From Styela clava (lineage: Eukaryota), in assembly GCF_964204865.1 (NCBI RefSeq), contig NC_135250.1, forward strand, positions 19,220,001-19,284,000: a stretch of DNA of 64,000 nt, written 5' to 3'. Below the pieces are notes generated by a model, which was not told the origin of the DNA, did no database searches, and saw only the letters and a list, made by a program, of their open reading frames with translations. Below are positions 6,405-48,571 of the stretch, piece by piece. Position numbers and translations under genes: made by a program. The stretch's first letter is position 1. Every line of letters starts with the position of its first letter.

Positions 6405-6449
6405 ATATGCGTATACTGCAAGGATGCTGTAGCTGGAATAAACAAAACT

Positions 6450-6667
6450 ATTCTATCCAATTAAAGAGTCCAGCTGTACACTAACACAAATGTATTTCTG
6501 TAATGTTTCGTCAGACTTCCTCAAACAAGCAGTTTACAACACCCACACTTCCACAGACAACACCTGTTTTACACTGCTTGTCTAAGAAAGTCTGACTCTG
6601 GTCGGACGAAACGCTACAGAAACACATTTGTGTCAGTGTGCAGCTGGACTCTTTTAATTGGATAGAA
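6450..6667. repeat. Fold-back inverted repeat with roughly 66-bp arms, probable MITE
   Basis: ttctatccaattaaagagtccagctgtacactaacacaaatgtatttctgta pairs with tacagaaacacatttgtgtcagtgtgcagctggactcttttaattggatagaa. Confidence 0.8.
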
Positions 6668-9600
6668 CATTCAACTGTTGCGAGAAATACAACAGCATTC
6701 ATCTCATCATACCGGGACTGGAATCGAATTCACTAGGCTGGTCTGATCAAATCACCTAATAGATCTCCAGTTGCAAGATACTGCAAGTTAAAACAATACA
6801 CATATTGCTTTACGAAATTCCCTAAAGATTCTGAGGAAATGAATACATTAAAGAAACCAACAAACGGCATACCAAGGATAAATTAGTCGCTTTTCTGGAT
6901 AGCATGCGAGCAGGGCCAGTGCACTAAATTGGGAAATCTCACATCAAGGTAATGGGTAGAGCATTTCACATTCTGTCGTCATAATGGTCATTATTGACCA
7001 ACAAATAGTATAAAAATGTAACCATGAGATGTCTTATTACATTTATTCAGCGGTAGTGTGAGACAAGACTCCTGAGTCACGTAAAATAATTGATTGACAT
7101 TTTTCAAAATTCCACATTCGCAAAAAATAATTGAAATTCGTGATAAGATTCGACTTACCAGTTCGAAGTCTGTCGCTGTGAGAAATACGACACAATCACA
7201 GCGCCAATTACGCTAGAGAGAAGAAGGAATACCAGACAACTGACGCCCGAATGCAACAATAACAGACGCGTTCCGGCGTTAGTGCCAGCAATACCGCGCA
7301 GTGGAAATGCGATGTCTGCAGCTAATCACTCGGTTGTTGGGGAAAAAATGAGGTTGATTATTGGCAACCATGTGCGCCGAATTATCGTCTGCACGACGGA
7401 GTGTATTTTCGCTTAACCTGTTCTGTCGCAGTTGTACTGCATCACCGTTTTCGAAATGCAGCGTTGATGGAGCGTCGACGGTTGCCAATTTCACAATAAG
7501 CCTACAGCGTCACGTCGACCTGCAGTGCGAGACAAGATTGCAGTTATTTGGGTGAACGACTTCCTGATGTGACGCTGACAGAATTTATGCAAACCACCAA
7601 GTGCGTAAATGTCATATTCTGCATGCCATTTTCGTTTTTATTGCATGAACGCATATTACTTAATCACGTATATATCATTTGTATTTCTGGGAAATATACA
7701 TTATTGCTCATAAATCCCAAGGTATGTGTTCTGGACGTGTATAATTGAATATAAATTAGCCTCGTCGGTTTTTCGGCCGTGAGAACCATAACGCTTTTAA
7801 CGGGAAATAACCCAGTAATTTTATCAAGTAATGTGTACGTTTTGTCAAACGGCCGCCGCGGGGCTACCTGTTTAGCAAATATTTTTGTGCTATTATACCG
7901 TTTTACGGATTACATTTAACAAGATAAGTTTCATGTTCCTGTTGAAACGGATCAATATTTGGCTCGCGGTGATTAGAGGTGGTATGCTCAAAAGCGGGCA
8001 CGCTCTGACGAAGTCTTAGATGACTAAATGTAAGTGGCAAAGTCATATTTTAATGTTGAACGCCATGAAAAGATACCGATGAGACGCGCCGCCTCAAATG
8101 AACTGGCAGTTTCGGCAACACGGTCATTGCAGAACGCTATGGTGTGGTTTTGCTTGGATGGCACGGATTGATGGAGTTCAAGCTGCCACCAGTCAAGGCA
8201 GATCCTGGGCACCTGCCGGCTTGTTTTTTACTTCTTCGATTCGAAAATACTCATGAGCAAGCAAAAATACGCGATACAAATCTATATCACTCTGTTTATC
8301 GGTGGTTTTCCGCTACAAGGCTGAATTCCCACTCTGGCCCTATTTGTGAACAAGAATATTTAAATTATAGTGACTTATTTTCATTTCCTTGAGCTCTTTC
8401 TTACGTTAGTGTTCACATTTTTGGATACTCAACCTTATGCCCTAACTTTTTATAACATGTTGAATGCGAGTTTTGCGATCTATGCAAAATGATAATGATT
8501 GTGAATTCTCATATCCGCCTTCATTCGCGCTATCCCATAGTTGCTGACTTAGAAAATTAAAGAGTTAAATATAAGATCAGAAAAGGCGCCTGAAATAAAG
8601 GTGTTCAAAGTGTTGTTGATGATTAATGATTTTTCTTCATCTTTAATTCCAAGGAAAAATAATCAAAATCGGTTGTCTCGAATCGAATTAATTATGCTCT
8701 TCAATTTTTCCACAAAACTATCTGTGACCCAAACCTGACTGATATTTTTCAATTTGTCATACATCACGCATAATGGCGAAACTTTGTCGTGTCTCTATGT
8801 TAGAATCAAGCTTCATTATATAGTCTTCGCCGCAAGCAAAATCACTACCTGTAAATATATTAACCGCCCTCGGGGCTCGGATCCAGGCATCTAACAGCCA
8901 GAAATTCTGGGTAGTATTTTTATGAGGCGTGTTCAACTGAATTAGTTTTTCTTGGTATTTAGCATTTACTTGCGCCTAAAGCTTTTACGAGATGTTAAAA
9001 TTTCAACGATAAAAGTTTCAGTCAAGTTGCAGTAATTAATGACTTCTTGATTTTGCTTGTTGGCAGTCTTGCAAAATCCCTCGAAAACATTACAAAAATG
9101 CCTCTTTGCTTTATCCTTTTTTCTCAGTTTGACTACATATATATAGATAAGATTGTAGGAAATATATTGTTTCGTTAACGTCTCTTCTTTACTTCCCCCA
9201 GCAGTGTGATGCTAAATTGACAATTTAAGTTTTGGCCTAATTAGTACGAACGTGTTAGGTAAGTGATTTTTTTCGAATTAGAAAAAGTTTTTTTACCAGT
9301 TGGGATCGATCTGAATCATCATTTTTTCTTTTGTTGTTCAAGATTTTGTTCAAATTACTGATATTCCCCACAAAATGTCTTGGTCATTTAGTAATCTATT
9401 TCCCCGCCTTGAATTATAGAACTTTATCTATATTCCGGCAATTTTCTTTTCCCTCTTTAAAAGGCAAGAAGCAATGTTTAACCCTTTCGTATTATAGATA
9501 CTGATAATCTTTTTTCCATTTGCACAATTACTACTCTCAATTTGTCGTAACATCCAAGCGGCAACAACCTTAAATACAAATTACGGCAGTAAAATTTTTG

Positions 9601-21966: not shown

Positions 21967-24260
21967 ATGTCACTATCCAGCGCTAATGCTGTTGACACGG
22001 CTGGGGTGGAAAGAGAGAGCCATGCTATTTGGAAACCTATAGATTTGTCTCAGTCTTCAAAAGCGGTATCAATACATTGGGAGTCAACCAGCTATGGAAA
22101 CTTTCCACGGAGAACCGAAGAAAAAACAAGCCAACAAAAGGTTCTTAAATTGACCACCCCTAGTGAAGAAACACGAGATATTTGTGGAAAGCACGTAAAA
22201 GGACATGTTTCGGCAGAACCTTCTCCAACAAAACAAAAAACGGAATTAAAGTTTCGGAAATCGTATTCGTGTGACGATATATCGACGATAGGGAGAGAAA
22301 TCGCTAAGGAAAAAGAAACATCTACGTTCAAAAGTATGGACAATAGTAACCCCATAGAAAATTCCGAGGAAATACGTGCAAAACCTTCTGCTTCAAATCA
22401 TCCTATGCCTGTGCAAAACGAGATCAACCTCGAGAATGATTCTATAAATTTCAATACACAAAATGCATATTACCTTGCATCATACGAACAGTACATTCAA
22501 AAAATGCTACACTCTGTAAACTTGCCAGAGTACAATAAAACAGAATTCTATCGTCAACTAATGCTAACAATGTTAATGAGTTATACCCAAGATCCCAGAA
22601 ATATTAACTCGTTATCCACGGTTATTAACCCGTTTGCAATGGCCCAACAACCTGAAAAAATTCAACAAGAATTACACAATAAAGTGCTTGCATCATCAAT
22701 AGAAAAATATTCTGACACAAGATATGTCGCGAGAAAGCGGAGTTTGATAAAATCGCCACACAACGAAACTGATAATGACGAAGAGATAATAGTTGATGAA
22801 ACAGTGGAGCAATATGGAAACAACACAAATTCTAAAGGAAACAGCCAAGACAAATATTACAAGCGCCATTTTAGCAATCAGAGTAACGAACCAAAAGAAA
22901 TTCAACAAACAGACGACCAAATGGACACAATTAAAAATCAAGGTATTTTTAGAAATGGCACCAGTCATATTAAGATTGAAACAAAGGATGATCAAGATAC
23001 AACGAGTTCAAATCATTTGATGCCCATTCGCAGTGAATATAATCACCAATATTCCAGAGAGTTTGATGACACAACTTCAATGGCTAAAAGTTATACAACA
23101 GGAGGACGTAACCAGCATACTACACAACGTTCCGAACAGAACTGGTTCAAAAATTCAGTCATCGACAGACATGAATACGAAAAAAACAGTGAGTAATTTA
23201 CCCTAAATTTCTTAAAAACCAATTCGAAGTTTCAATCATTTTAAAATATAGTATTGGAATGGTATTGATAATTATTTTTGTAGAACATATATATATGTCA
23301 TTTTCAACATTTCTGATGAATATTTGCACAATTACAATGATGGAAGAGAGCTTTAAGGTCTAAAAACCTGGATTTATGTTAAAGCTGAGATTTTCATCAA
23401 TGGTAATACTGTATTTTAATAACCCAAATATTAATATTTTTCAAATTTCCAGAAAGTTCTCCAGAGAAAAAACATCGGAGAAATCGAACGACGTTCACAA
23501 CATATCAACTGCATGAACTAGAAAAAGCTTTTGAAAAATCCCATTATCCGGATGTCTATAGCAGAGAAGAACTAGCAACAAAAATTAGATTACCAGAAGT
23601 CAGAGTACAGGTACGCTTCGTTCAAATTTCCACCATTTTATCCGTATAGTCGCAATTTCGAACAAAAACTGATTTATGAGACTGAGAATGTTAGGGCCTC
23701 ATTGAGGCTAAGATTCACAGATATAATACCACATTGACAATGAGTCTTATACATATGTTGTTTATATTTCAGGTATGGTTTCAGAATCGACGGGCAAAAT
23801 GGCGTAGACAAGAAAAAGTAGATATCAGACATACAGTTATGGATTACGAAAACACTACTCATAGATTGAACAGTAAGCTGTCGTATTATGAGAAAGACAC
23901 AATCAAATTTCGCGTTTATTTCTTTTCAGGGCTCTTCTACTGCCATTAATAGCATTTTATAAATTCATGGAATGCACTGAATGTTTATGAATATATATGC
24001 TGTACGGCTTGCCCTCAAATATCGTATAAACCCTTATTCAAATGAAGTTACGCACTAGAATAAACTATTATCTTATAGCTTAGATTAGTATCAGATAACA
24101 TCATTTTATTTCAATGTAAGTATTATCATTTAATATGAAAATAAATTGTCACTCTTTCCATTTAGCAACTTCTCATTTTCAAACGCCAAGGAAGGATACA
24201 GCGCCACTTTTGCTTGCTTCTAACGGTGCCGGATTTCTTCTTCAAGCAGCCAAGCAATGA
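21967..24260 (+). CDS. Rx: Retinal homeobox protein Rx/Rax (PRD class, Q50). Exons 21967-23188, 23453-23610, 23773-23872, 24166-24260; the last exon is less certain
   Basis: The spliced homeodomain reads [48 protein letters not shown]|[15 protein letters not shown], diagnostic of Rx, with the typical PRD-class intron between Q and VWF. All junctions are GT-AG and in phase. Confidence 0.95.
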
Positions 24261-30930: not shown

Positions 30931-33900
30931 CAGTGGCGGCGCGTCAATAGGGCCAACCGGGCCATTGTCCCGATTGTTTTTTCGGTATAATAAAAATATT
31001 CGAAAAATACCTCAATATCGGTTGCACAGACTGTCTACACTAGCCATATTCTCCCGACATGGTTCATTTTTCGCTCGCAAAGCCGACATGGTTCATTTTT
31101 CGCTCGCAAAGCCTTCGCCGAACGTCGACGGGGCGACGCCGATTTCGCCCCGGTTGCTCATTGTATATCGTATTCTCTCTTTTATCTTCCACTCGCCGCG
31201 TTTGTCTCGTTTCTTTTACTAAATCATCGGGGCCGTTGGGGGCTAGCCCCGAAAAATATGACGACACAATGCCGACGTTTCTTACAACAACGTGTTGACA
31301 TATTCACGCATTCCTTCTCGTTCGTTGGTTGCTTGAAGAGTTGATAGTTTCCTCGCTTTCGTTTTTGTCGCTTGTTTCGCTATTTGAATCAGTTAGAGAC
31401 CTTTAGTCCATTTGCTTTCGATTTTCCACATTCCTTTTGAGCTACTCACTTCTTTCCGGCTTCGCATTTCTTAGCCTTAGACCTCATAATGAATTGATGC
31501 ACTATTTCGCACTCCGTTTTCGCAGCTGCCGCTGGAACAAAAATTAGAGGTACAACGTCTTGGGCCTTATCAACCAAAAAATTGTTCACTGGAACAATCC
31601 CATGACGGAGGAAAGCGTCGGCGTACATTCTGCGCAGAAACTTGGTATAAAAAACACGAATGGTTATGTTACAGCGAGGACAAAAATGCATTTTTTTGTT
31701 TTTATTGCCTACTTTTTGCTACCGCCCGTTACTCACGTTGGTGTAAATTTGGTTTTAGAGATCTTAAACATCTTTCCGAGCGTGCCAGGGATCATCAATC
31801 TTCTATGGAGCATCTGAACAATGCAGTAAAATACCGAACATTCGGAAATGTTAATATTGCAGCACAGTTGGATGAAGGACGCGCGGTTTCTATTCGTCGG
31901 CACAACCAAAACGTCGAGAAAAACCGCCATGTTCTCGGTCGATTGATAGATGTTTTGAAGTTCATTGGTTGTCACGAGCTGTCCCTCCGTGGGCACGATG
32001 AACGGGCTGGCTCTTCTAATAGAGGGGTATTTTTGGATATGGTGGAATACACCGCATCCCTAGATACAGTATTGAGAGATCATCTTGATGCCGCAACTGT
32101 TTCGAAAGGGACATCTAAAGATATCCAAAATGATTTGCTCGACTCAATGTATAAAATTTATTTACAAAATTTGGCTCTGGAAATTAAGAATTGCCAGTTC
32201 CTTTCGAGACAACTGACATCACGTGCGTTTCCCAACTGGCTGTGATTTTTTCGGTTTGTGAAAGATGGTAAACCTACCGAGAGATTTCACAGCTTTGTAC
32301 CAATCGTTGATAGCACGGCTTGCGGGATATCGGCTGTACTGAAAGAAGTGTTACAGCCTTACAAAGCGAAGTCAAAATTGATAGCACAAACTTATGACGG
32401 CGCGGCAGTCATGAGTGGGTCGAAACATGGTGTTCAAGTTTATATAAAAGAAGATTTTCCTCATGCGCATTTTTTACATTGTTATGCACACTAATTTAAC
32501 CTCGTTATTAAAAATATGTGTCTTGATACCCCTCTCGTCCGTATATTTTTTGCAAATGTTTCGGGGTTTTCTTCATTTTTTTCCGTTTCGCCGAAGCGCT
32601 CTGACCTCCTTCGCCAGATATGTAGCCGCCGTCTCCCAGCTTGTGCACCAACACGTTGGAACTTCCAATCACGCGTGGTGCAGGGCGTGTCCGAAATTAG
32701 GTCTGAGCTCATTGAGTGTTTCAATGGCATTCAGAGCTCTACGGTTTGGGACGAACGCTCTGTGAGGGAGGCGGCAGGTCTAAAGCGTCTGCTAGAAGAT
32801 GGGGAGTTTTCATTTTTCTCGCTTTTTTCTCCACAATATTCTATCACGTGGATGTATTATACGACGCATTGCAGTCAAGGCTAATGGATGGAGCGTCTGT
32901 GCAGTCGTGTATTTCAGACTTCTGCGATGCTGTATCTCGTATCCGGCAAACAATAAAATACGACGACACATGGAGTGCTTCTTCACGCCGCGGGCAAACA
33001 ACGCAGCGTTTGATTTTGTCTGCAAAGGAATGCTGTGACATTCTTGTGAATCAAATAGGCGATCGTCACTGAACACCCTGCCGCGTTCTCTTTGATGAAC
33101 CGCAAAATTTTTTCAAAATTTGCACGTCAATTTCCCATCCATTTGTTGGCTACTGTCTCCAAATTTTACCCCATGATAAACGTGGGTAAATTGGAAAATG
33201 AATTGCGATGTATATACACCAATCAAACTTTTTTGAACATCACATCAACTTGCGCGCTCTATGGGTTCCTCATAGATAACACTCTAGTAACTACCTTTGC
33301 AGCGTCTGCAAAATTTCTGGACATCTTTTGACGACGCCTATTTCTTCCGCCGACGCAGAGCGAACATTCAGCACGCTGAAGCGTATTAAAACGTATCTCG
33401 GAAACACAATGAAGCAAGATAGATTAAATTCCTTGGCTGTTTTATTCATTCAGAGAGACGTTATTTCTGGGATGCATGACTTTAATCAGCGCGTTATTGA
33501 GCATTTTGCTTCCAAGAAACCGCGGCGTGTTGCATATATGTTCAAGCAGTATAAGTCTAGCAGCATATATATATATGAGTGAGCGACGCATGTCCTTATC
33601 TTTGCATTATCTTTCTTTTCTTCATAGTAACGTTTTAAACCTTATTTTAGGTTTTGTTTGCTTTCCCGAAGTTTCTGTTAATATGTCATTGTATTTATCT
33701 GGGTAAATATTGCCTCTCCTTTTGAAAGAGGTTTCAAAATAAACTATGTCTATATTTATTAATCCCTTGACTTGGACCGGTTTTAAAGACACTTTCTTAT
33801 CGTTAAAAATTGTCGCTTTTGCCGATTGATTGTTACCGATGGAATGGTTTTTATACTCATAAAATGATGGGAGAACTTACAGCGCTCATCCTGTCCCCGT

Positions 33901-35958: not shown

Positions 35959-36823
35959 TCATGATATTTCGGTCACTGTCCAAGATGAAGCAGAATTAAC
36001 TTGACCTTCCATGGCGACGGCATATCCCTTTTCATCAATGTCTAGCCATAACTTGGGGACAGTGACAGATTGAAGATGTGCTTTTCCTGTCAATGTACTG
36101 TGGATTAGTCTCAAAACGCGATTGTCTTTTTTAAGATTTGGTATGTCTTCAGGCTCACAGCCTTCTCTAGTTACTACAAGACGACCAGCTGTGGATGGTA
36201 CTTCAATATATCCGATTGTATTTGCGCAATGATCTTCAATTCCGAACAAAAATAGATCTTCGGCAAGTTTCCATCCCACAAGTTCGTAGTCTGGGGTATC
36301 ATAAGATACTTTAACTGCGAAACGTGGTCCTAACTTTCGGACAATCCAACTGGTGTCACTAATGGTATGACGTATTAGGGCTCTGAATTTGTGTGTGTAC
36401 ATGACATCAGAATAATCGATTGTAAAATTTTGTCTTTCTCTACGTATTCTACAGAACAAAAACAAATAATGAATATTGATGCAGCTTTTGTAAATGGGTT
36501 TAAAAAATTAGTGGTTGGTACTATTCAGACGTCCAAACTATAAGTAGTATTTTGCAGATGCGATTCATGGCAATTATGGAAAATAACAAATTTTGACAAG
36601 CACGAAGTTTGACATATGTACCGAAAACATGGATTCATAATATCCTTCGTCGACAGAAATGGGGGCTAAGACCCGGTTCTCACTTTCCACTGTGACGGTG
36701 ATGTGTTACTAATTATTTTACTAAGATTATGACATCAATACTGTAATCAATATCTCGCCATGGTTCCAATGAGCAAAACCTAATAAAGCTTGGAACTCAC
36801 TTTCCCGGTTCTTTATTACCCAT
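35959..36823 (-). CDS. Leaderless protein of about 170 aa, predicted beta-trefoil cytokine-like (IL-1/IL-18-like; FGF-like is the alternative). Exons 36823-36801 and 36448-35959, with an alternative in-frame ATG at 36838
   Basis: ATG GGT AAT AAA GAA CCG GGA AA|gtgagt splices in phase to tttgttctgtag|A ATA CGT. The alternating beta-strand pattern and the C-terminal HLQSVTVPKLWLDI resemble the IL-1 signature FESAQFPNWYIST. The family call is by eye only. Confidence 0.7.
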
Positions 36824-38339: not shown

Positions 38340-40744
38340 GTACATGATATGCTAAACAATATTTCAGTCCTCATTTTCACTCTGAACTTGTTCACGGACG
38401 CTCGACTCTAATGAGGCACAGCTAGTCTGAGTAATTTTGCGAATTTGTTAATTATTCCTTCTAATAACCCATGACTATCTATGAAGAAACACTAATGCTA
38501 TTTTAAAATGCCACGAAGTTCGGTGTTCAAAATTTTCCAATGCGCACACTAAGATTACTATAATATGGGACAACTAGATTGCTGTGGCTACAGGGACCTT
38601 TCGTCAACGCATAATGACCGTCATAAATACATTAGTCGTGCTGTTCAACAGGGTGATAATGCATAAATAGTAGGCGCTAAGCGCTGTCACTTAACATCGG
38701 ACTCCTCATGTACCGGTATGTCATATTTTAACATACTGCTAATCAGCTAACTCTCGCGGCACGTTAGCACAATGACTGATTAGTTATCACTTAGCTGTCT
38801 GATTAAATTCACTTTTACTGAGTAGCTAGCTATACATCAACGGAAACAGTTTCCAAATTGGCGCATGCCGATCAAAGCGTATAGATTGATTACAGAAAGG
38901 TACAAGCATATAGAACTGAAAAAAAAATCTTGACGAAGCACAATCTGTCCAATATGTCGGAATGACCAGAAAACTCCAAGTAAAATTTACCTGTTTTATA
39001 GAGTTCGAAATCCGTCTGAACGTACCTTACAGACGTTTTTAAACGAAGCATCATTTGCCAATTTTGTGATCGCGTACAAATGCAAAAGGTCATTTGTCTG
39101 GTCAAAATATTTCGTGATGAAATGGAGAATACGTTAAATTCGTTCGAAACAAAATTTAACTAACAAAGCAAGTGAGCGCCATTATGTAATTATCTTTATA
39201 TAGTTATTAAAAATGCGTTTTCCCAACTTTTCTGTTTTAACAGAAACGATCAGTAGTCCACGGAGAAAAGATTGAAACATAATTTACAATGAGATTGCAG
39301 AATCTCTCGCAGGAATAATGTTTCGCATGCCAATCGTTTAACTTTAAATGGTCTGTGTTTAGTTGTGATTTGGACTGAGATTTTGCTCCAAAAAATTATA
39401 ATGTAATTAGATATCAGATAAGTTTGATATATATAAAATATATTAAGGTAGATATATATAAAAAAAAAAGTGCCTAGGTGAATTTTATGCGTCATACTAG
39501 TTTTATCGACCATGTACACATAATTCTTGGAATTGTCAAACATTTGGCGATCTGTGTAGTCTGTGCAATAGTTTATATACAGTTTTTGAGACATTTGGGC
39601 GCACGGTTACCCAACCCTATGTAATATTACTATGCTAATTTTAAGCCAAAACCATAGTAGTAGACTCTACCGGAAGTGATATTTCAAATTCGGTCTCCTT
39701 TTGACGTCACATTTGACTGATATGACCATTACTCGCATCATTCATTCACGTTGAAGATGCCTCGTCGCATTGAATCGTGATAAAAATTGAAAATAAAAAA
39801 CTCTACACGATGCTTTACACAAATTTTGTGGGAAAGGAGAAAATTATGTAAATATTTTTCCATGAAGAAATCGCTGTTTAATGAGGTATAGATCGAACAG
39901 GAAATATGACCCATATTTAATAGTATAACGAAACCTATTTTACAATGGAGTTATACCAAATTTTAATATGTCGATGTTAAGTTATTATGCCAACATTTAT
40001 AGTCTGCTTTTTTAAGAATTGAAAACATAATTTAAAATGTAGTTCAAAATCAAATTATAGAAGTCACACGTTTTATATATATTTATATAATTAACAGGAT
40101 TTGAATATCTTTAGCATGCAAATATGATAGTACATGGTTTACTGACTGAAAAGCAATAAACTTAATGAATTCCGGTATTTTCACTTCACGCAATTAAATT
40201 TTCTCCCTTCCAAAATTTCCTTTTAATTGTGCAAATTTTCTCAATCGCCAAGAAAATTTATGCCATCAGTGCTACTTTGTGAAATTCATTGTCACCCAGA
40301 TAATTTTTGAGTGTTCACGTTTAACGCTTTAAGTCAATTCGTGATTTTGTTTTGGACGAAAACAAAATATGTTTAGTTTTTAAATAATTCAGATCGGCTA
40401 TAAAGTTGCAATGTTATCATATTTTGTTATGTAGTCAGTCATAGTCAAGTTTATTTTTTCCATGTAGTAAAAAATAGCATACGAAATTGACAAAATACAA
40501 AATTGAACACACATATTTACTGGGGAGGGAAGTCGCGGGGAACCAGGATTGGTTATCGAGCGGCGACACCCAAATGTATGTATTTGGTTGGACGACATGT
40601 CGATTTAAAAATTTTCGACCGTGCCATACTGACACAAGATTACTAATCGAACACTCCTGGAATTGCACAGATAGCTGAGTGGAGTAATCTGCAAAATATT
40701 ATATACATGTTTCAATTATTGGACACGAAATGTACATATGGATC

Positions 40745-41040
40745 GTTATGTTATTATTATGATGTTGTTGTTCTTGTTGGTATTTTTCTCATTGTTGTTA
40801 TGAAAAAATCGCTTTACTCATTAACTATTGGACCGATTGCTTTGAAATTTTCAATGGTTAACGCTTGTATTTTTCGCTAGAAGTCTATCACCTTTATTTA
40901 TTTCATAACTTAATGTGAGCTCTATGTAATTCGTTTTTCACTTTGAAATTTTGTGTAATGAACTCTTCAAAATCAATAAAAATTATTCGCTGCGACCTCG
41001 CTCCTATTATTCCCGTGCTACTTTTTGACCGTACCGTGCA
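40745..41040. repeat. Helentron/DINE-1-like non-autonomous repeat, copy 1
   Basis: (tta/ttg)n microsatellite followed by aaaatcgc...tggaccgattgctttgaaattttca.tggtt. Matches 42810-43045. The class assignment is inferred from architecture. Confidence 0.55.
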
Positions 41041-41878
41041 GTAGCAGAATAGGCAAGCTACTGTATAACAGTAGTCATCAAACTTTCGGTTTATGGGGCC
41101 CGTGAGGAGGTTGAATATTATTTACGGAGCCCCACGAAAATATTATGAAGAAAAAAACGAAAAATTGCGACATCTACTAATCATTAGGGCATTACTGACA
41201 ATCTCTTGTGTTGCGAGCGTGCAGCTCTGGTGGTTCGGTTTGTGTCGTCATATAAGTATGTGTAATAGTCACTCTTGCTTTGAACAAACTCACTCCAAAC
41301 TTATTTGCTGACTAGGGAAACAATCTGTCTTACCATTCATATGATTGTAATGTAAAATATCAACTACAATCACCGGAACCCAGGCAATATTGTACTTTGT
41401 TATCTGGAATCGTACTGAAGCTATGCTGAGCATCATGGTTGGGGCATAGCTGCATATTTCGCTAGCGATTGTTTGATTCAATTTGACAAAGTGAAGTTAG
41501 ATGAACCGTTCAAACAATCAACTTCTGTCAATGATATAAATGTTGGTTAGCTTATTTGCATATATATAGAATCAAAATTTTTCAATAGTTCCAAATATAA
41601 TATAAAATATTGTTAAAACATATTGATAAACAGTCACTTCACGGATAGTTTCATCATGAATAATGACTTTCATGTATCTAACTGCGTCGTCCTATAACAT
41701 CCGTTATTTCGGCGATGATAATGTGTTCCGGAAGCGTATAATACATAGAGCCATTATTTTTTGAATTTATTTTTTCGCAGTTTTACCAACTGAGAAAATG
41801 ACATGACAGAATAGAATTGGACATTTGCTACATCAGTTTTATCGCGTTGAGGGCATACAGCACCGACAGCAGCAAGAA

Positions 41879-42564
41879 ATGATAATGATCATAAAGGTTG
41901 TCATCGTAACTATGCTATCTCTTAGTATTCGGTAAGTCTCGTTTTAAGTTTTGAAATGTATGGAAAACCTAATTACTGTACTTAAGATGTTGGCATAATA
42001 ACTGTTATTGATTCTCGTTTCAGTGGAAAGATATACAGAAGACGTGAGCCACACTTATTTTTATTTATTTAATTTAGCTTAATCGTTGGCTCCTATTTTT
42101 GTAAATTGTACGTAAACTTTTTGATCAAAGATAGCAAACTTTACACTGCCTCGAAAAGAAACAATTGTAGCTTTTATATCGGTTCATAGTTCAAAATATG
42201 CGCTCGTGTTCTTAATTAAAATTGAGATTGTAATTACAATTTATTCACATAGTGATAATTTGTCAGTTTAGGAGAAGTGATTTATGCTGCTTTACGCTAA
42301 ACTGTTGAACAATACTGTGCTCATTTGTCCAAATGGTTAAAAGTGAAATACAGTAATAATGCTGTAACAATGTTTCTGCTTTCAGGTTACAACGATGAAA
42401 AGGGAATTCATGGGCCCGCATACGATTATGTGGATGTAACGAATACCTACTATGATCACGTTAACAATGAAAAGAGATACAAACTGGAAGATTATATGAA
42501 CAAGGATACTGAAAAAGTTAGGAATCACTTTTACGACGTGGTATACAATGAATTGGTTGTCTGA
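41879..42564 (+). CDS. 83-aa Tyr-rich microprotein with a hydrophobic N-terminus. Exons 41879-41931, 42024-42043, 42386-42564
   Basis: Donors CG|gtaagt and C|gtgagc and acceptors gtttcag| and ctttcag| join in phase to give MIMIIKVVIVTMLSLSIRGKIYRRRYNDEKGIHGPAYDYVDVTNTYYDHVNNEKRYKLEDYMNKDTEKVRNHFYDVVYNELVV*. There is an in-frame stop upstream and a strong acceptor (ttttttcgcag) at 41780. Confidence 0.7.
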
Positions 42565-42809
42565 TAAACTAAGGTCGATTCTTAAGAAAATATTTAGACA
42601 AGCGTATAAATACAGTTGCCATGACTATATTTCATTATAGAAGTTTGATTTTTCACTCAAATATATCTAGCCTATACACAAAAAAATCTGATTCTTTCGC
42701 GTTGAAAGACCTAGTAACTAGTTGAAAGGCTCTGGAGTAGACGACTGGGCAGGGCAAAATTGATTATTGAGAAGGATTCTGCTTAGCCTTTTTGGACTCG
42801 AAATGGACA

Positions 42810-43045
42810 TAACGATCGTTTCAATGTTGTGTGTTGCGTGTTATGTTGTTGTTGTTCTTATTCTTTGACAATTTTTTAAAAAGTCGTTTTTCTCTTAGAT
42901 TACTGGACCAATTGCTTTGAAATTTTCAGTGGTTGAAGATAAAATTTTCTTCAGAAGGATATTACTTTTTTTTTGCTATGACGTCATCAAAATTACTGCC
43001 ATTAGGTGACGCTACGTGTCTATATATTATTTGAGCATAGCTCGT
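42810..43045. repeat. Helentron/DINE-1-like non-autonomous repeat, copy 2
   Basis: (gtt)n tract followed by tggaccaattgctttgaaattttcagtggtt, homologous to the copy at 40745. Confidence 0.55.
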
Positions 43046-45204
43046 TTGTTTATTTTATGGAGCGTTGGGGATCATCCATGCGACATGAAAACAATATAAC
43101 TTCACTTCATGCATTGCCAGAGTATTTTGCAAAATTAGATAAAATATTACAAGCGAAGATTTGACAGGTTACGGTTTCGCAATAAGAAGGTAATTTATTG
43201 AAAGACTCAAGAAAGAGAGAGAGAAAGTTTTTATTACCACAAACAATATCAACACTATGATGCATTCGAAGCCACCAAAATAATATAATTCAACAATAAT
43301 TGGTTGATCACTTTTTGTGAGGGTCAATATACAAGATCGGTTAGGTCGCCGAAGCTCCTGGCCCATAGCCTACTGTATTTAAGAAATCAATCAGATATGG
43401 TATCAGCGATGAAACATGGATTAAATATATACCGGAATGTTCGAGTCAATTTAATATTTTAAAGTTAATAATGCAAGTTGTGATGTTAATAAGTCACGTG
43501 AAGTTTTGAATCAGGACATGTCCATAGAATCGAGACAATTATCAAGAGTGTATATTCAGTTATTACAATTATTTATAATAGTTTTTGGGATTAAATATTC
43601 ATTGGATAAGTAACGGGTTCGACTACAAGGAGAAAAAATTATGAGGCAATCGGGTTTTCACAGATTCAACGAAATTTATAATACAGTGTCCGGCACATTT
43701 ATTTTAAAATATTAAACTCAAGACATATTGAGATATTAGAACAACTTTGAGTATTTATGTAAAAAAACGTTTTTATTTTTTTGAAAACAAGCACATAACT
43801 TTTTTCAATTGAAACATTGCCCCAAACCTGTACACCTATATATATATACTACTATATAAAAATATGTTTTGTCCACCTCAGTGTACACTTGCGGAATAAA
43901 ATAGCGTGTTTAATGAAGACCTGGTGCAGTAATATTGCACTTTTTGTAATGGGATGAAATAGTGCTACAAGGCTGGGCGCTTGAGGCCATTTAAATACCT
44001 ATGCATAAACTTCGCAATTTATATTGTATACCTATCCAAATACTTCAGGAATTCCATGCTGGTGGTAGAGCTTTAAATTGGTTACATGACTTATCACTGT
44101 AAATTCATTCTTGGACAAGTGAAATATGTTTATTATCCGGATGCTATTCTGGTACCATGCTGGTTATAGAGTCTTAATAAGTTCAAATTTTGAAAATCAG
44201 ATATGATACTGTAATTGTTCTCGTTACCGATAGTTCAAACCATCGTAGCCTATACCACGTCCTCCTTAAAAAACTTTCGTAGGCGACCATTGTCGGATTA
44301 GGATTTCAGCAAGTAATTATCTGTACTTGGAGAAAGTTAGCTACAGTATTTGGTTTGAGACGTTCTATCGACTGAAGAAATAAGCAAAAGATGAACAAAG
44401 TTTGTTTGGCTACTTATTACCAACTTCCCAATTGTAAATTCACTTTTCCAAATTATTATTTACGCTTTAGAGCGAAACCCATAATTAGGACTTCAATGCG
44501 ACTCAAATATAAGTGAGTATGATAAAAATATAAGTTTACTAATACTGATCAGTGCGAAGGTCATCGAGGACCCATGTAGCCTACTTGGAAATTTAATGAT
44601 GACATTTGCATAACAGGACTTCACCTAAATGTCTTTACGCTGATATAACTATGCTGATACCAACGGCCAGCCACGCCTAAATTTACTGAAGTTAATGAGA
44701 ATTAAATTTGTTGCAGAAATTACAGATTTCATATCAAGCGCGCTCCGTCGCCTAATTCACAATTTACCAGAAACTGATATTGTCTCATATGGAATTCCAA
44801 GTTCGTTTTGAAAATATTTCAACAATGGCATAATAATATGCATCATAAGTTCATTCATACGAGACGTCAGACTAGAACATCATCTGAGAATTATAAGATT
44901 GAGTATTTATACGCGTTTTTAGAATTATATAATAATTGATATGGTCGACCTGTGATAAGCAAGGTCTTTCTAATATTTTCACCTCGAATATCTTGTGTTT
45001 AGACTTAGAGTTATCTACAGTCGATACTGCAAAACTCAGCCACTTCACCAAACAGCACATTTACTTATAGTGTTACTAAGTGTTACTAAGAATCAGTCCT
45101 TAAAAACAGTTACTGTATATTTCAAAAAGTTCTCGTTGTTAGCATGAAACGCGAGAAATATAAAGTGTGGAACACTAGCTGGACGTTTAAACGTGATGAT
45201 ATCA

Positions 45205-45385
45205 AGAGTTATGGACCTTTCCCCGACCTTTGACCCCCGAAAAATTCTTTTCATACTTTACCATTGGAAAATTTTTGGGGATATTTTAAAAGTGCTTTTG
45301 CGAGTTGGCGCCTGTAAAATGGGGTATGTGTTTCAAACCATCATTAGGATACATCGCATACAACAATCTGTTTTTCAAAAATACC
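45205..45385 (+). repeat. Dispersed repeat, with a second copy at about 59470-59620
   Basis: tggac.tttcccc.acctttgacc...accattg.aaaat.tttgg...ggcgcctgtaaa.tggggtat...tttcaa.ccatcatt...caacaatct.tttttc is shared by both copies. Confidence 0.7.
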
Positions 45386-46102
45386 AGTAAAGAATTTTAG
45401 CCTGGTCTATCACAGCTATTTCTACACTAATTTTTATTACTGCAATTAAATTAAAACTCCCAGGAAGACAGAGTAATCATTGAGTTATTTGATTTACATT
45501 TAGATTTCCGAAACACAACTGAAAACTAACAAATAGAGTTCAAAAATGCGCAAACGAGGTAGTGTTTACGACCACGCTTGAAAATCTGTCTGGGTGAGAC
45601 AAGTGTCTGAGCGGATGCAAAAAGGGAGCATTGTTACGTCACTTTTTGCATCTTGCTGATTAGCCAATGTCACGAAGTAAACAAGGCAGTCGATGCTCTG
45701 GGAAAGGTCCATTCATTTTTCAAACCAGAATAAAATTTGCCCTAAACGTGAATAACATATTTGCAGACCTGTAGCTTTGTCATGGATGTTTTTTTTTTTT
45801 GTTAGTTCGACCGTGTTTATGAATGAGCTTGGCAATTCTGATATCTGATATGCTGAATACAAATTCATCCAAAAAACGTGATCGAATCATGGTTAACTGA
45901 TCATCGAATCCACCCTTCGGCATTATCATCAAATATTTTTACCGCGTGGGACAAAATTTTTTGTTCAACAGTTTCTCCCAAACGTCCCGGACTTGTCCAG
46001 CTTTTGTCTGTTGTTCCGATCGTCTCGCATTTGTCGTCTGATCGAATCCCAGTGCTACAGTCCAGCAGTCGGAGAAGCCGGCCGTACTTGAGCGGCTTGA
46101 TT

Positions 46103-48571
46103 ATGAAAGAATATTTCGCCGTAAATGGCTCTCGGAACTCACTTCCTGGAGGAGCTAGAATTGCTAAAAAGGGGACTACCAACGGATGGAATTCAGTATC
46201 AGAAAGACCTGTCGAGGAAGAAAGCATCGACCATCTCACATGCGAGGATGAGCAGATACCATCCTGTGCAAGTAACATAATGTCACCCCAAGGATCCGGT
46301 TTTCAACAAAATGTAGGATTTACAGGACTAAATAATCTCGGAAACACATGTTTTATGAATTGTGTGCTTCAAGCTCTCGCAAACATTCGGGATCTTCGAG
46401 ATTATTTTCTAAGCCACAATTTTCTTCAAGATCTCAATGAAGAAAATCCACTCGGCACTGGTGGTCGACTAGCAAAAGCCTTTTATACAACATTGAAAAA
46501 CTTGTGGTCTGGTAATGATACTTATGATCCAGCAAGGTTGCGGAATATTGTAGCAAAAAAAGCTCCTCAGTTTTTGGGAATTATGCAACAGGATGCGCAA
46601 GAGTTCATGTCATTCTTTCTTGATGCTTTACATGAGGATTTGAACAGAGTTCGAAATAAACCAATATTTGAAGTGGGTGATTATGATGGTTATCCAGATG
46701 AGGAGGTTGCGAGAATTTCTTGGAAATTGTATAAGTCTCGTAATGATTCGTTTGTAATAGATAAGTTTCATGGCTTGTATAAATCAAGATTGTTATGTCC
46801 TGTTTGCGAAAAAGAATCAATAACTTTTGATCCGTTTCTTTTTCTATCTGTTCCTTTACCTAAACCAACAAAAAGTGTTCCCGTTATATTCTTCCCATTG
46901 CTTGATGACACAAAACCTTTATTCATTGATGTCAAAATATCTGAAGAAGGCGGCCTTGCGTCAGATGTTTTAAATCACATCGTAAAGACTTATGGCATAA
47001 ATTCTCAAAACTTAAGAGTGTTTTTAACAGAATCTGGAAAAATAGTCAGAACTATTCCACCAAGTTCACTTTTGCCCTATTTGACATCACCAGAATCGCT
47101 TATCGTGTGTGAGATTTCACAATCTGAAGAACCAAGCCATGAAATCATTCTTATGCAAAAGAAGGAGACTCCAAAGATGGTTGATAATTGCGCAAAGTGC
47201 GGAAAATGTGAAGACGAATTGGGCTTCAAAATCAAGCGATGTTTGAAGTGTAAATCAGTCGGATATTGTGGTCAAGATTGTCAGAGATCTGACTGGCCTC
47301 AGCATAAGCTAAAATGTAATCAGATAAGATTTATTGGTTGTCCATTGTTTTTGAACATACAGTCATCAATGGCTAATTACCACAAAATTTGTGATATTGC
47401 ATATTCAAATGCAAGGCATTCAGTGAAAATCCTCAATGATGAAAGAATGGAAGGTATATCAAAGTTTGATGGATTAAAAAGAAATTTGAAAGAAAGTGAA
47501 AAAGCAGCAATAGCGTGTGCATATGTTGGAGACTCCCTACCTGCTTATATGAAACACGAGAGCATGTTTAATCTATACATTTGCCATGATGAAAAGCTAA
47601 CAAATATGACATTGCTCGAAAATAAAGCTGGCGAAAAAATCGATCTAACTGATGTCACACACTTTGTGATTGAGTGGAAAATTGGTGTTAATGTTGCAGA
47701 AAAGCCTTTACATTCAGGCATGAAATCTGGCAGGCATAATAATACAACCTTACAAGATTGTATACAATTATTCACAGAGCCCGAAGTGTTAGCCAGAGAA
47801 GAAGCATGGTATTGTCCGAGATGCAAGAAACACAGAGAAGCGACAAAAGAATTATCACTTTGGCAGCTGCCTGATGTTCTTGTTATACAGCTCAAACGAT
47901 TCTCTTTCAGGAACAGACTTTGGCGTGATAAAATTGATAAACTTGTCACATTTCCTGTTAAAGGTTTAGATATGAGTCCATTTTGTATAAAACAGCAGAC
48001 AGAGCCACCTGTATATGATTTGTTCGGAGTTGTCAATCACCACGGTGGCTTGTTTGGCGGACATTACACTTCTTTTGTTCAATTAGCGGATGAAAATGGC
48101 GGAGACACTGATCTTGGATGGCGTCTATGTGATGATACACATGTGACCACAGTCAGGTCAGAAAAAGAAGTTGTCACAAGTTCATCTTATGTAATGTTCT
48201 ATCACAGACGTAAAAAACAATCTGTTTTAAGTGGGGATTGTTTGTCTGATGATCAATTTACACAACTGAACATGCCCCATCATTCTAATGAAATAAAATG
48301 CACTAAACAGTGCTCTGAAATTAAAGACAGAAATGTGAAAGTTCCAAGACAATCAAAGATAGCCAAACAACCAGATGAAAAAAATTCACCCATCAATCAG
48401 AAAGCGTCACAGTCAACACTTAGTACAGATAACAAATTAACAAGTAATGATGGAAAATCTGATCGGTGTCCACACGAAGAAAAAAGCATTGAAATGAATG
48501 TCTCAGCTAAAGTCGATACAACAAAACAGGAAGCACCTCTGCCATATACCGATATGGATGCTATGGATTAA
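46103..48571 (+). CDS. USP19: Ubiquitin C-terminal hydrolase 19-like (USP domain with an inserted MYND finger), single coding exon
   Basis: Cys box GLNNLGNTCFMN, QQDAQEF, MYND CAKC..CLKC....YCGQDCQRSDWPQHKLKC, WYCPRCKKH, His box NHHGGLFGGHYTS and WRLCDD. A MYND finger inside the USP domain is characteristic of USP19. The first in-frame ATG is 46103; the ORF track start at 45878 is a GTG. Confidence 0.88.
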   Translation: MKEYFAVNGSRNSLPGGARIAKKGTTNGWNSVSERPVEEESIDHLTCEDEQIPSCASNIMSPQGSGFQQNVGFTGLNNLGNTCFMNCVLQALANIRDLRDYFLSHNFLQDLNEENPLGTGGRLAKAFYTTLKNLWSGNDTYDPARLRNIVAKKAPQFLGIMQQDAQEFMSFFLDALHEDLNRVRNKPIFEVGDYDGYPDEEVARISWKLYKSRNDSFVIDKFHGLYKSRLLCPVCEKESITFDPFLFLSVPLPKPTKSVPVIFFPLLDDTKPLFIDVKISEEGGLASDVLNHIVKTYGINSQNLRVFLTESGKIVRTIPPSSLLPYLTSPESLIVCEISQSEEPSHEIILMQKKETPKMVDNCAKCGKCEDELGFKIKRCLKCKSVGYCGQDCQRSDWPQHKLKCNQIRFIGCPLFLNIQSSMANYHKICDIAYSNARHSVKILNDERMEGISKFDGLKRNLKESEKAAIACAYVGDSLPAYMKHESMFNLYICHDEKLTNMTLLENKAGEKIDLTDVTHFVIEWKIGVNVAEKPLHSGMKSGRHNNTTLQDCIQLFTEPEVLAREEAWYCPRCKKHREATKELSLWQLPDVLVIQLKRFSFRNRLWRDKIDKLVTFPVKGLDMSPFCIKQQTEPPVYDLFGVVNHHGGLFGGHYTSFVQLADENGGDTDLGWRLCDDTHVTTVRSEKEVVTSSSYVMFYHRRKKQSVLSGDCLSDDQFTQLNMPHHSNEIKCTKQCSEIKDRNVKVPRQSKIAKQPDEKNSPINQKASQSTLSTDNKLTSNDGKSDRCPHEEKSIEMNVSAKVDTTKQEAPLPYTDMDAMD

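What the first reader, a model, noticed from the sequence alone, without database searches (positions are those of the whole stretch)
41879..42564. Three-exon 83-aa microprotein: hydrophobic N-terminus, basic cluster and repeated YDxV/YNEL motifs
Seen: a 17-aa hydrophobic start, a 20-nt micro-exon encoding most of RGKIYRRR, then a 58-aa acidic tail with 9 Tyr, including YDYV, YDHV, YDVV and YNEL and an internal repeat (YYDHVNNE vs FYDVVYNE). RRR and KR sites bracket a 28-aa segment. Hypothesis A: a secreted peptide precursor cut by convertases at RRR and KR, releasing Tyr-rich peptides suited to sulfation (as in cionin/CCK) or DOPA modification (as in ascidian blood-cell peptides). Hypothesis B: a minimal LAT/DAP12-style membrane adaptor, with a transmembrane segment, a positive-inside cluster and SH2-docking tyrosines. 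YDxV is the Nck-type motif and YNEL occurs in CD3zeta ITAMs. I recognise no known family for it.
Basis: partly seen in the sequence, partly recalled or inferred. Interest (0 to 1): 0.75.

Follow-up and report, generated by a model that had tools for sequence, protein, structure and literature searches.

The report
Unannotated orphan tyrosine-rich microprotein gene
The three small exons are real and are spliced together exactly as predicted into a short messenger RNA for an 83-residue protein with a greasy front end and a tyrosine-rich acidic tail that has no known relatives, but whether it is secreted or sits in a membrane is still open.

Summary
Exons 41879-41931, 42024-42043 (20 nt) and 42386-42564 read as described. 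Both predicted GT..AG junctions occur in assembled contigs of 3 of 3 RNA-like runs from three studies. They are absent from the one full-coverage DNA-like run, which carries the unspliced locus. The transcript spans about 41812-42686.

The reading frame looks translated. It starts at the first ATG, and the chance of 83 open codons is about 0.001. Codon periodicity exceeds all but 3 of 215 chance open frames in the window.

The gene is single-copy in its own genome. Its 58-residue tail has no relative in the word-indexed protein search or in 1.84 billion representatives, not even itself, so it appears unannotated. Pfam and the ESM Atlas gave only noise.

YDxV occurs three times; 2 of 20000 shuffles reach that. 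The KR site is not enriched, and there is no canonical ITAM.

Function is unresolved. My estimates are secreted acidic Tyr-rich precursor 0.4, N-terminally anchored membrane protein with a cytosolic YDxV tail 0.3, and non-coding 0.12. This scan has already noted many other orphan small-peptide genes in this genome, but not this one.

The parts
41812..41878 (+). 5' untranslated part of exon 1 (minimum extent; the true start may lie further upstream)
   Evidence: Contig of X1 reaches 41812, X5 reaches 41851 and X2 reaches 41865. There is no ATG in 41812-41878, and an in-frame TGA lies at 41804-41806 just upstream.
41879..41931 (+). Exon 1 coding part: start codon, 17 hydrophobic residues (Lys at 6, Ser at 14 and 16), then two bases of an Arg codon
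   Evidence: The donor GTAAGT starts at 41932. The junction is seen in X1, X2 and X5.
41932..42023 (+). Intron 1 (92 nt, GT..AG, phase 2)
   Evidence: joint 41930->42023 'skips 92, GT..AG (cut +1)' in 3 of 3 RNA-like runs and not in X10. GC is 0.30.
42024..42043 (+). 20-nt micro-exon 2: the basic cluster (five of eight residues are Arg or Lys once the split codons are counted)
   Evidence: In one search it is the 21-letter 'side' between the two joints in each spliced contig.
42044..42385 (+). Intron 2 (342 nt, GT..AG, phase 1)
   Evidence: joint 42043->42386 'skips 342, GT..AG' in X1, X2 and X5. Depth is 0 in bins 42138-42371 of these runs and 22 in X10.
42386..42564 (+). Exon 3 coding part: 58-residue acidic Tyr/Asp/Asn/Val-rich tail in two weakly related halves separated by KR, with three YDxV, one YxN and a C-terminal YNEL; stop TGA at 42562-42564
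   Evidence: A polymorphism at 42440 C>T (Thr to Met, at a CpG) is seen in X1 and X5.
42565..42686 (+). 3' untranslated region. AATATA at 42660-42665 lies 14-19 nt before the place where contigs stop (42679 and 42686), at a genomic run of seven A
   Evidence: Contig ends are 42654 (X1), 42679 (X5) and 42686 (X2); sequence. That this is the poly(A) site is inferred, not shown.

Best explanation
This is a real, single-copy, apparently unannotated and lineage-restricted protein-coding gene. Three exons are spliced into an mRNA of about 440 nt, and its first ATG opens an 83-codon frame.

Most likely mechanism (inferred, not shown):
- Exon 1 is a short cleavable signal peptide. Lys6 closes the n-region, 9-11 hydrophobic residues follow, and Ser sits at -3 and -1 before Ile17.
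- The product enters the ER and is secreted as a cysteine-free, acidic, tyrosine-rich polypeptide.
- The RRR encoded at the micro-exon and the KR in the middle of the tail may then be cut by proprotein convertases. That would release two weakly related 28-residue peptides, each starting with Tyr and each carrying the [aromatic]-Y-D-x-V-x-N-E motif.
- The Asp/Glu-flanked tyrosines are candidates for sulfation or oxidation.

A variant inside this reading: the +5 basic stretch and the -5 acidic tail form the charge-balanced layout of antimicrobial-peptide precursors.

My confidence by layer: the transcript about 0.97; that it is translated about 0.85; that it enters the secretory pathway about 0.7; that it is secreted rather than anchored 0.4.
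For: Transcript:
- Both junctions occur in 3 of 3 RNA-like runs from three studies and in 0 of 1 DNA-like run. Introns and flanks (40968-41786, 43074-44000) have zero depth in X1 and X2.
- 9 of 13 listed runs hold only 0.10-0.26 of the words of the 1101-nt query, which is the exonic share.
- It is not a retrocopy. Protein and DNA searches of the whole genome find this locus only.

Coding:
- The frame starts at the first ATG of the transcript.
- With p(stop) = 0.080 per codon, P(83 open codons) = 0.001.
- Base composition differs by codon position (chi2 31.2, p = 2e-5). Purine at position 1 is 0.753, above all 215 chance open frames of 58-120 codons in the window. Periodicity is exceeded by 3 of 215.
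- GC3 is 0.43 against 0.30 in the introns.
- Only one variable site was seen in the transcript across three studies, and no indels.

Secretory reading:
- The n/h/c layout of exon 1 is read directly. The -3/-1 rule is recalled knowledge.
- The tail splits into two 28-residue halves around KR that align over 16 residues.
- Basic stretch +5 against tail -5 (and reading).
- A review states that antimicrobial peptides are generally made as precursors from which an anionic propiece is removed, and that clavanins and styelins come from Styela clava haemocytes (PMC2866484, passages).
- Earlier notes of this scan report many orphan secreted peptide precursors in this genome. I did not test these.
Against: - No signal-peptide or topology predictor was run, and no cleavage, secretion or modification is shown.
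- Five basic residues directly behind the hydrophobic segment is the classic stop-transfer (positive-inside) picture and argues for the rival topology.
- The single KR is not more than chance (2814 of 5000 shuffles). There is no Gly for amidation.
- RRR lacks Arg at P4 of the furin consensus (recalled).
- The internal repeat is only marginal (259 of 5000).
- The thrice-repeated YDxV (2 of 20000 shuffles) is a known cytosolic SH2-docking motif.
- There is no cross-species conservation evidence of any kind, because no relatives' genomes were available and no homologue was found.
- The one coding polymorphism is non-synonymous.
Confidence: 0.4

Rival explanations
1. N-terminally anchored single-pass membrane microprotein (N-terminus out or lumenal, tail in the cytosol). 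Exon 1 would be an uncleaved reverse signal-anchor and the micro-exon the positive-inside stop-transfer cluster. The tail would be a tyrosine-phosphorylated docking platform with three YDxV (Nck-type), one YxN (Grb2-type) and a C-terminal V-x-Y-x-x-L. It would then work like the nephrin tail or vaccinia A36 rather than like LAT or DAP12.
For: - Five of the eight residues after the hydrophobic stretch are basic.
- YDxV occurs 3 times against 2 of 20000 shuffles reaching that. YxxV occurs 4 times (64 of 5000) and [SIVLT]xYxx[ILV] twice (262 of 5000).
- There is no Cys and no N-glycosylation sequon in the tail (and reading).
- A36 Tyr112 in the context I-pY-D-S-V binds Nck and Tyr132 binds Grb2 (PMC9333988, passages).
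- Nephrin signals through 3 cytoplasmic YDxV motifs (PMC11247170, abstract start in the listing).
- Earlier notes report ITAM-like receptor tails in this genome (untested).
Against: - The hydrophobic stretch is only 17 residues from Met1 and has Lys at 6, which leaves 11 uninterrupted residues. That is short for a plasma-membrane span (recalled knowledge on span lengths).
- There is no juxtamembrane Cys for palmitoylation.
- The tail has no Ser and a single Pro, which is unlike typical disordered signalling tails.
- The single-sequence AlphaFold2 model makes one helix, residues 14-57, at mean pLDDT 65.6 (weak evidence).
- There is no canonical ITAM (0).
- Two of the three YDxV copies are the two arms of one internal duplication, so there are fewer independent events than three.
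- Short Tyr motifs are easy to find in a tail that is 15% Tyr and 14% Val.
Confidence: 0.3
2. A spliced non-coding RNA, or a very young de novo transcript, whose 83-codon frame is a by-product of A/T-rich sequence and is not translated into a functional protein.
For: - There is no homologue anywhere and no paralogue.
- No conservation test was possible.
- Stop-free stretches of 58-120 codons are common in this window (215).
- The composition (Tyr, Asn, Lys, Ile) is what A/T-rich codons give.
- The structure prediction has low confidence.
- The only coding variant seen is non-synonymous.
Against: - P(83 open codons from the first ATG) is 0.001.
- The frame is kept across two introns, including a 20-nt exon.
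- Codon-position periodicity and position-1 purine content lie at or beyond the extreme of the 215 control frames. That control set includes this exon's own genomic open frame.
- GC3 is above the intron GC.
- There is a repeated, composition-independent motif.
Confidence: 0.12
3. An organelle-targeted microprotein, either signal-anchored in the mitochondrial outer membrane or inserted in the inner membrane. The moderately hydrophobic N-terminus plus the basic flank would be the targeting signal, and the acidic tail would face the cytosol or the matrix.
For: A short N-terminal hydrophobic segment followed within a few residues by a cluster of Arg and Lys is the layout I recall for Tom20-type signal anchors and for several mitochondrial microproteins.
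Against: The resemblance is recalled only and no tool tested it. The Ile/Val-rich segment is more hydrophobic than I recall for such anchors. A Tyr-rich acidic tail is not a known feature of those proteins.
Confidence: 0.08

Closest known systems
Antimicrobial-peptide-type precursors of ascidian haemocytes (clavanins, styelins) and peptide-hormone precursors in general
   Same: Small multi-exon gene. Short hydrophobic N-terminus, then a basic stretch, then an acidic tail of equal and opposite charge (+5/-5). Basic cleavage-type sites are present. Removal of an anionic propiece is general for such precursors (PMC2866484, passages).
   Different: The basic stretch is only about 9 residues, far shorter than the 23-residue clavanins. 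There is no detectable sequence relation to anything else in the same genome, so it is not a paralogue of those genes. There is no amidation Gly. The dibasic site is not enriched over chance.
Nck/Grb2-recruiting tails: nephrin cytoplasmic tail and vaccinia virus A36
   Same: Three YDxV motifs, as in nephrin (abstract start of PMC11247170). YDxV and YxN occur on one short tail, as with A36 Tyr112 and Tyr132 (PMC9333988, passages). That A36 also has an N-terminal membrane anchor with the tail in the cytosol is my recollection.
   Different: There is no sequence homology. The topology is unproven and the hydrophobic segment is very short. Phosphorylation and SH2 binding are untested. The tail is 58 residues with the motifs 10 and 27 residues apart.
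Transmembrane adaptor proteins LAT/NTAL/PAG and ITAM adaptors DAP12/FcR-gamma/CD3-zeta
   Same: Small size, almost no ectodomain, a basic juxtamembrane cluster and several tyrosine motifs.
   Different: There is no Cys at all, so no CxxC palmitoylation motif and no disulphide. There is no acidic residue in the hydrophobic segment (a Lys instead). There is no canonical YxxL/I-x6-8-YxxL/I (0). There is no homology.
Sulfotyrosine peptides
   Same: Tyr next to Asp or Glu at 5 places in the tail, with possible convertase sites.
   Different: Acidic neighbours of Tyr are not enriched (1474 of 5000 shuffles). By my reading there is no C-terminal amidated WMDF-type core; that motif is recalled. There is no homology.

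Membership tests
Convertase-processed secreted peptide precursor | Cleavable N-terminal signal peptide | tested here: inconclusive
   The 17-residue hydrophobic start has Lys6 and Ser at -3/-1, so the layout fits by eye. No predictor was available and the joined protein was not built. The basic cluster right behind it argues the other way.
Convertase-processed secreted peptide precursor | Di- or multibasic sites that flank the product peptides, more than chance or conserved | tested here: inconclusive
   RRR and KR are present. One dibasic site in the tail is reached by 2814 of 5000 shuffles. Conservation could not be tested because there are no homologues.
Convertase-processed secreted peptide precursor | Repeated or related product peptides | tested here: inconclusive
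   The two 28-residue halves align over 16 residues at offset 27 with score 34, which 259 of 5000 shuffles reach.
CCK/cionin family | Sequence homology and the family's C-terminal amidated core | tested here: not met
   No homologue and no Pfam family. The tail ends without Gly and without such a core (the motif itself is recalled).
LAT/NTAL/PAG-type transmembrane adaptors | Juxtamembrane CxxC palmitoylation motif | tested here: not met
   There is no cysteine in any of the three exon translations.
LAT/NTAL/PAG-type transmembrane adaptors | Membrane span of about 20 or more hydrophobic residues after a very short ectodomain | tested here: inconclusive
   There are 17 residues from Met1 with Lys at position 6. 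This is borderline, and topology is not testable here.
LAT/NTAL/PAG-type transmembrane adaptors | Multiple tyrosine docking motifs in the cytosolic tail | tested here: met
   YxxPhi occurs 5 times (84 of 5000 shuffles) and YDxV 3 times (2 of 20000). Phosphorylation is untested.
DAP12/FcR-gamma/CD3-zeta ITAM adaptors | Canonical ITAM YxxL/I-x6-8-YxxL/I | tested here: not met
   There are 0 canonical ITAMs. One Val-variant spacing occurs at tail residue 12, which 429 of 5000 shuffles reach.
DAP12/FcR-gamma/CD3-zeta ITAM adaptors | Acidic residue in the membrane span and an ectodomain Cys for dimerisation | tested here: not met
   The hydrophobic segment holds Lys, with no Asp or Glu and no Cys.
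Clavanin/styelin precursor families of the same animal | Detectable sequence relation to the family's genes in the same genome | tested here: not met
   Whole-genome searches with the tail (E up to 10) and with 951 nt of the gene find only the locus itself. The 17-residue signal exon alone was too short to search.
Nck-recruiting YDxV platforms (works-like, not a homology family) | Phosphorylated YDxV motifs on a cytosolic, membrane-tethered tail that bind the Nck SH2 domain | not testable with these tools
   The motif count is met. Topology, phosphorylation and binding need experiments.

The most novel reading that the evidence does not exclude
The gene encodes a minimal, endogenous membrane-tethered actin-signalling platform of an invertebrate chordate. 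A 17-residue N-terminal anchor and a stop-transfer micro-exon would hold a 58-residue tail whose three YDxV sites and one YxN site, once phosphorylated, recruit Nck and Grb2. That is the combination used by the nephrin tail and copied by vaccinia A36 and EPEC Tir, here compressed into an 83-residue orphan protein that arose within the tunicate lineage.
Probability: 0.12. Interest if true: 0.75.

Novelty: new variant of a known kind. Interest (0 to 1): 0.45.

Why it matters
The finding shows that a reader working from raw sequence predicted a three-exon gene, including a 20-nt micro-exon, exactly. It also shows that this gene is missing from a collection of about 15 billion predicted proteins. 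The case documents how small spliced genes escape annotation.

The protein is a clean orphan with a composition-independent repeated motif (YDxV three times). Its two live readings are easy to separate at the bench, by topology and by tyrosine modification.
- If it is secreted, it adds a cysteine-free, Tyr-rich acidic peptide to the unusual modified-peptide chemistry of ascidian blood cells.
- If it is anchored, it would be a very small natural multivalent phosphotyrosine scaffold outside vertebrates.

By itself, with function untested, it is one more lineage-specific microprotein in a genome where this scan has already noted many.

Tried and rejected
Searches that led nowhere:
- Homology. The exon-3 peptide gave nothing in the word-indexed search of 5.8 billion proteins. 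phmmer over 1,835,955,588 representatives gave 0 hits at E up to 0.001. Pfam gave only UspB at E 0.23, 11.9 bits against a cut-off of 28.6, which I take as noise. The ESM Atlas gave a best score of 0.80 to phage and bacterial hypotheticals with recognition 1291, below any useful level.
- Paralogues. Protein and DNA searches of the own genome found only the locus itself.
- Structure. The single-sequence AlphaFold2 model of the tail has mean pLDDT 65.6 and is one long helix. That is too weak to search against fold libraries, so I ran no fold search.
- RNA families. Rfam over 39000-45500 on both strands gave no match at E up to 0.1.
- Literature. 'Styela clava' plus 'tyrosine-rich' gave 1 paper, a general review seen in the listing only. 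'Styela clava', orphan genes, transcriptome and signal peptide gave nothing relevant, listing only. I did not search papers for the peptide's letters, so I make no claim that it is not in print. Supplementary files were not opened.

Readings considered and rejected:
- Exon of a neighbouring gene. The next gene downstream is an intronless-looking 904-codon USP/MYND frame at 45857-48568, but the RNA contigs stop at 42654-42686 and depth is 0 from 43074 to 44000.
- Antisense gene. The GT..AG junctions fix the + strand.
- Processed retrocopy as the source of the 'spliced' contigs. There is a single locus and no joint in X10.
- ITAM adaptor. There is no canonical ITAM.
- Precursor of known ascidian DOPA peptides. 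My recalled sequences of tunichrome Sp-1 and plicatamide do not occur. This rests on recall only.

Not done:
- Signal-peptide and topology scoring, exact-sequence look-ups and a whole-protein fold were therefore left out.
- I did not test the species name given in earlier notes.
- No relatives' genomes are available for this genome, so no conservation or dN/dS test was possible.
Full report
WHAT IS THERE. The window is A/T-rich animal DNA (GC 0.30-0.42 in 2-kb steps).
- An ATG at 41879 opens 17 hydrophobic codons. Two more bases follow, then the donor GTAAGT.
- After TTTCAG comes a 20-nt exon, 42024-42043. It encodes GKIYRR plus one base on each side and is followed by GTGAGC.
- After CTTTCAG, exon 3 starts at 42386 and gives a 58-residue tail ending at TGA 42562-42564.
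- The two codons split by the introns (cg|t and c|gt) both read Arg, so the product has 83 residues.
- I read those two codons by eye. In practice that meant exon 3 only, because exons 1 and 2 are too short to search.

IS IT TRANSCRIBED AND SPLICED THAT WAY. Yes.
- The run search listed 13 runs. Nine of them (X1-X9, studies P1-P3) hold only 0.10-0.26 of the sampled words of the 1101-nt query, which is about the exonic share. Four (X10-X13, study P4) hold 0.99-1.00.
- I laid X1, X2, X5 (one from each of the three studies) and X10 on 40500-44000.
- Each of X1, X2 and X5 has one contig with both joints: 41930->42023 (GT..AG, cut +1, that is 41931/42024) and 42043->42386 (GT..AG). The 20-21 letters of the micro-exon lie between them.
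- X10 has neither joint. It has an unspliced 2000-nt contig over 40927-42926.
- In X1, X2 and X5 the depth is 0 in intron 2 (bins 42138-42371) and 0 from 43074 to 44000. In X1 and X2 it is also 0 from 40968 to 41786. X5 has one low-depth (2.6) unspliced contig at 41354-41620.
- The database only guesses that these runs are RNA. An intron-less form with silent introns and flanks, a single genomic locus and no such form in the DNA-like run together show that it is RNA.
- The contigs span 41812-42654 (X1), 41865-42686 (X2) and 41851-42679 (X5). AATATA at 42660-42665 lies just before a genomic run of seven A where the contigs end. That fits a poly(A) site but does not show one.
- The true 5' end is unknown. 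A strong acceptor-like TTTTTTCGCAG ends at 41780 and a TATAAT lies at 41737-41742. I did not pursue either.

IS IT CODING. Probably, about 0.85.
- There is no ATG in 41812-41878, so 41879 is the first ATG of the known transcript. An in-frame TGA at 41804-41806 closes the frame just upstream.
- With the transcript's own base composition a codon is a stop with p = 0.080. The chance of 83 open codons is 0.001, and of the 59 codons in exon 3 alone 0.007. The other two frames of exon 3 are broken by 4 and 8 stops.
- Over the 81 whole codons, base composition depends on codon position (chi2 = 31.2, p = 2e-5). Purines make up 0.753 of first positions, more than in any of 215 stop-free stretches of 58-120 codons in the six frames of the window. 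G at position 1 (0.333) is reached by 6 of 215, and the periodicity measure by 3 of 215.
- That control set includes real exons, transposon frames and this exon's own genomic open frame, so the comparison is conservative.
- GC3 is 0.43 against 0.30 in both introns, but 50 of 215 controls have as high a GC3.
- Across the three studies the transcript shows one variable site, 42440 C>T at a CpG. It changes Thr to Met and is seen in X1 and X5. There are no indels. The frame is therefore intact in all data seen, but one non-synonymous change says nothing about selection.

RELATIVES. None.
- The 58-residue tail finds nothing in the word-indexed search.
- phmmer over 1.84 billion representatives gives 0 hits at E up to 0.001. 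Not even the protein itself turned up, so the gene product is absent from that collection, which means it is apparently unannotated.
- Pfam gives only a sub-threshold UspB match (E 0.23). The ESM Atlas gives scores of 0.80 or lower, at noise level.
- In its own 377-Mb genome the tail (E up to 10) and 951 nt of the gene match only this locus.
- The genome has no relatives in the searchable genome set, so conservation could not be tested.
- Earlier notes of this scan name the animal as the sea squirt Styela clava and describe many orphan small secreted-peptide genes in it. I did not test the name or those claims. None of those notes concerns this locus.

ANATOMY OF THE PROTEIN.
- Exon 1 holds seventeen residues, all hydrophobic or small except Lys6. 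Ser is at 14 and 16 and Thr at 11.
- Exon 2 with the split codons holds eight residues, five of them basic.
- Exon 3 is a tail of net charge -5. It has 9 Tyr, 8 Val, 7 Asn, 7 Asp, 5 Glu and 5 Lys, and no Cys, Ser, Trp or Gln.
- The basic stretch is +5, so the two parts balance.
- The tail falls into two 28-residue halves separated by KR, and both start with Tyr. The halves align without gaps over 16 residues at offset 27 (score 34; 259 of 5000 shuffles reach it, so the repeat is marginal).

Motif counts against shuffles of the tail:

| Motif | Observed | Shuffles reaching it |
|---|---|---|
| YDxV | 3 | 2 of 20000 |
| YxxV | 4 | 64 of 5000 |
| YxxPhi | 5 | 84 of 5000 |
| [SIVLT]xYxx[ILV] | 2 | 262 of 5000 |
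| ITAM-like spacing with Val | 1 | 429 of 5000 |
| Canonical ITAM | 0 | not applicable |
| YxN | 1 | 3536 of 5000 |
| Tyr next to Asp or Glu | 5 | 1474 of 5000 |
| Dibasic site | 1 | 2814 of 5000 |

- The one feature clearly beyond composition is therefore the thrice-repeated [A/Y/F]-Y-D-x-V. Two of its copies are the arms of the internal duplication.
- The single-sequence AlphaFold2 model of the tail is one helix (residues 14-57) at mean pLDDT 65.6 and pTM 0.35. I give it little weight.

HOW IT MOST LIKELY WORKS. An N-terminal hydrophobic segment of this kind should take the protein to the ER. The open question is whether it is cut off.

For a cleaved signal peptide:
- One positive charge (Lys6) sits before a 9-11-residue core.
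- Small residues sit at -3 and -1 (Ser14, Ser16; the rule is recalled, von Heijne).
- The span is short for a membrane helix. My own hand sum with recalled Hessa-scale values is near zero, which is not a tool result.
- Cationic peptides directly behind signal peptides are common in antimicrobial-peptide precursors, which are generally made with an anionic propiece (PMC2866484, passages).

For an uncleaved N-out, C-in anchor:
- Five basic residues lie directly behind the segment. This is the positive-inside or charge-difference rule, which I recall.
- There are no cysteines.
- The enriched YDxV is the Nck SH2 docking motif of nephrin (three copies; abstract start of PMC11247170; title of Blasutig et al. 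2008 in the reference list seen) and of vaccinia A36 Tyr112 (I-pY-D-S-V, with Grb2 at Tyr132; PMC9333988, passages).

I weigh these as follows:
- Secreted 0.40. This includes the variants 'cut at RRR and KR into two related 28-mers with modified tyrosines' and 'charge-balanced cationic and acidic precursor'.
- Anchored adaptor 0.30.
- Non-coding 0.12.
- Organelle-targeted 0.08.
- Other, the rest.

What is shown: the transcript, the junctions, the frame statistics, single-copy status, the absence of relatives and the motif enrichment. What is inferred: translation, targeting, cleavage, modification and binding.

COMPARISON WITH THE KNOWN.
- It is not a member of the CCK/cionin, LAT-type, DAP12-type or clavanin/styelin families. 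For each, at least one defining feature was tested and not met (see the membership table).
- It may still work like a convertase-cut precursor or like a YDxV platform.
- The kind of thing, a lineage-restricted microprotein with an ER-targeting N-terminus, is well known. This particular sequence family is new and unannotated.

SURROUNDINGS.
- The gene sits alone between two copies of a very high-copy dispersed repeat (40798-40873 and 42873-42948, 76% identical, same orientation). Depth there reaches 226371 in X10.
- Upstream lies a 182-codon minus-strand frame at 35962-36507 with no Pfam match.
- Downstream lies a 904-codon plus-strand frame at 45857-48568 with UCH (E 1.4e-67) and zf-MYND domains.
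- Other Pfam-supported features of the window are a homeodomain exon at 23407-23646 and hAT transposase remnants at 31493-33579.

VERDICT. The gene is real and very probably coding. It is an orphan and apparently unannotated. The mechanism is undecided between two readings that simple experiments can separate. Interest is moderate.

Noticed in passing
window 40798-40873 and 42873-42948 (with GTT-rich 40757-40778 and 42841-42862): Two same-orientation copies (76% identical over 76 nt, 2075 nt apart) of a very high-copy dispersed repeat bracket the gene. Depth there reaches 4560-7573 in the RNA-like runs and 226371 in X10, and many DNA contigs jump between the two copies. I did not examine whether the 2.1-kb unit between them ever moved as a block. 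The gene is single-copy, which argues against that.
   Followed up: partly
window 42440: C>T at a CpG changes Thr to Met in the tail. It is seen in contigs of X1 and X5 but not in X2 or X10. It is the only variable site seen in the transcript.
   Followed up: partly
window 40927-42926: The 2000-nt contig of X10 differs from the window at 5 places, all between 41137 and 41656, and at none in the following 1270 nt that hold the gene and its introns. This could be lower diversity around the gene or just haplotype structure.
   Followed up: no
window 45857-48568 (+): An uninterrupted 904-codon frame with ubiquitin C-terminal hydrolase (UCH, E 1.4e-67) and MYND zinc-finger domains. It looks like an apparently intronless USP gene 3.2 kb downstream of the microprotein gene.
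   Followed up: partly
window 23407-23646 and 23695-23946 (+): A homeodomain split over two open frames. The first matches Pfam Homeodomain at E 1.3e-15. The second continues with a WFQNRRAKW-type helix 3. This is a homeobox gene in the window.
   Followed up: partly
window 31493-33579 (+): Broken frames with DUF4371 (E 3.3e-07, below the curated cut-off) and the hAT C-terminal dimerisation domain (E 8.6e-10). This is a decayed hAT-type transposon.
   Followed up: partly
window 41354-41620: A low-depth (2.6) unspliced contig in RNA-like run X5 only, with 5 differences from the window in 267 nt. It could be background DNA, pre-mRNA or an upstream transcript. It is not joined to the gene.
   Followed up: no
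window 41798-41814: Two overlapping mini-frames (ATG ACA TGA and ATG ACA GAA TAG) lie just upstream of the known 5' end of the transcript. They would be upstream ORFs if transcription starts further upstream, for example after the TATAAT at 41737-41742.
   Followed up: no
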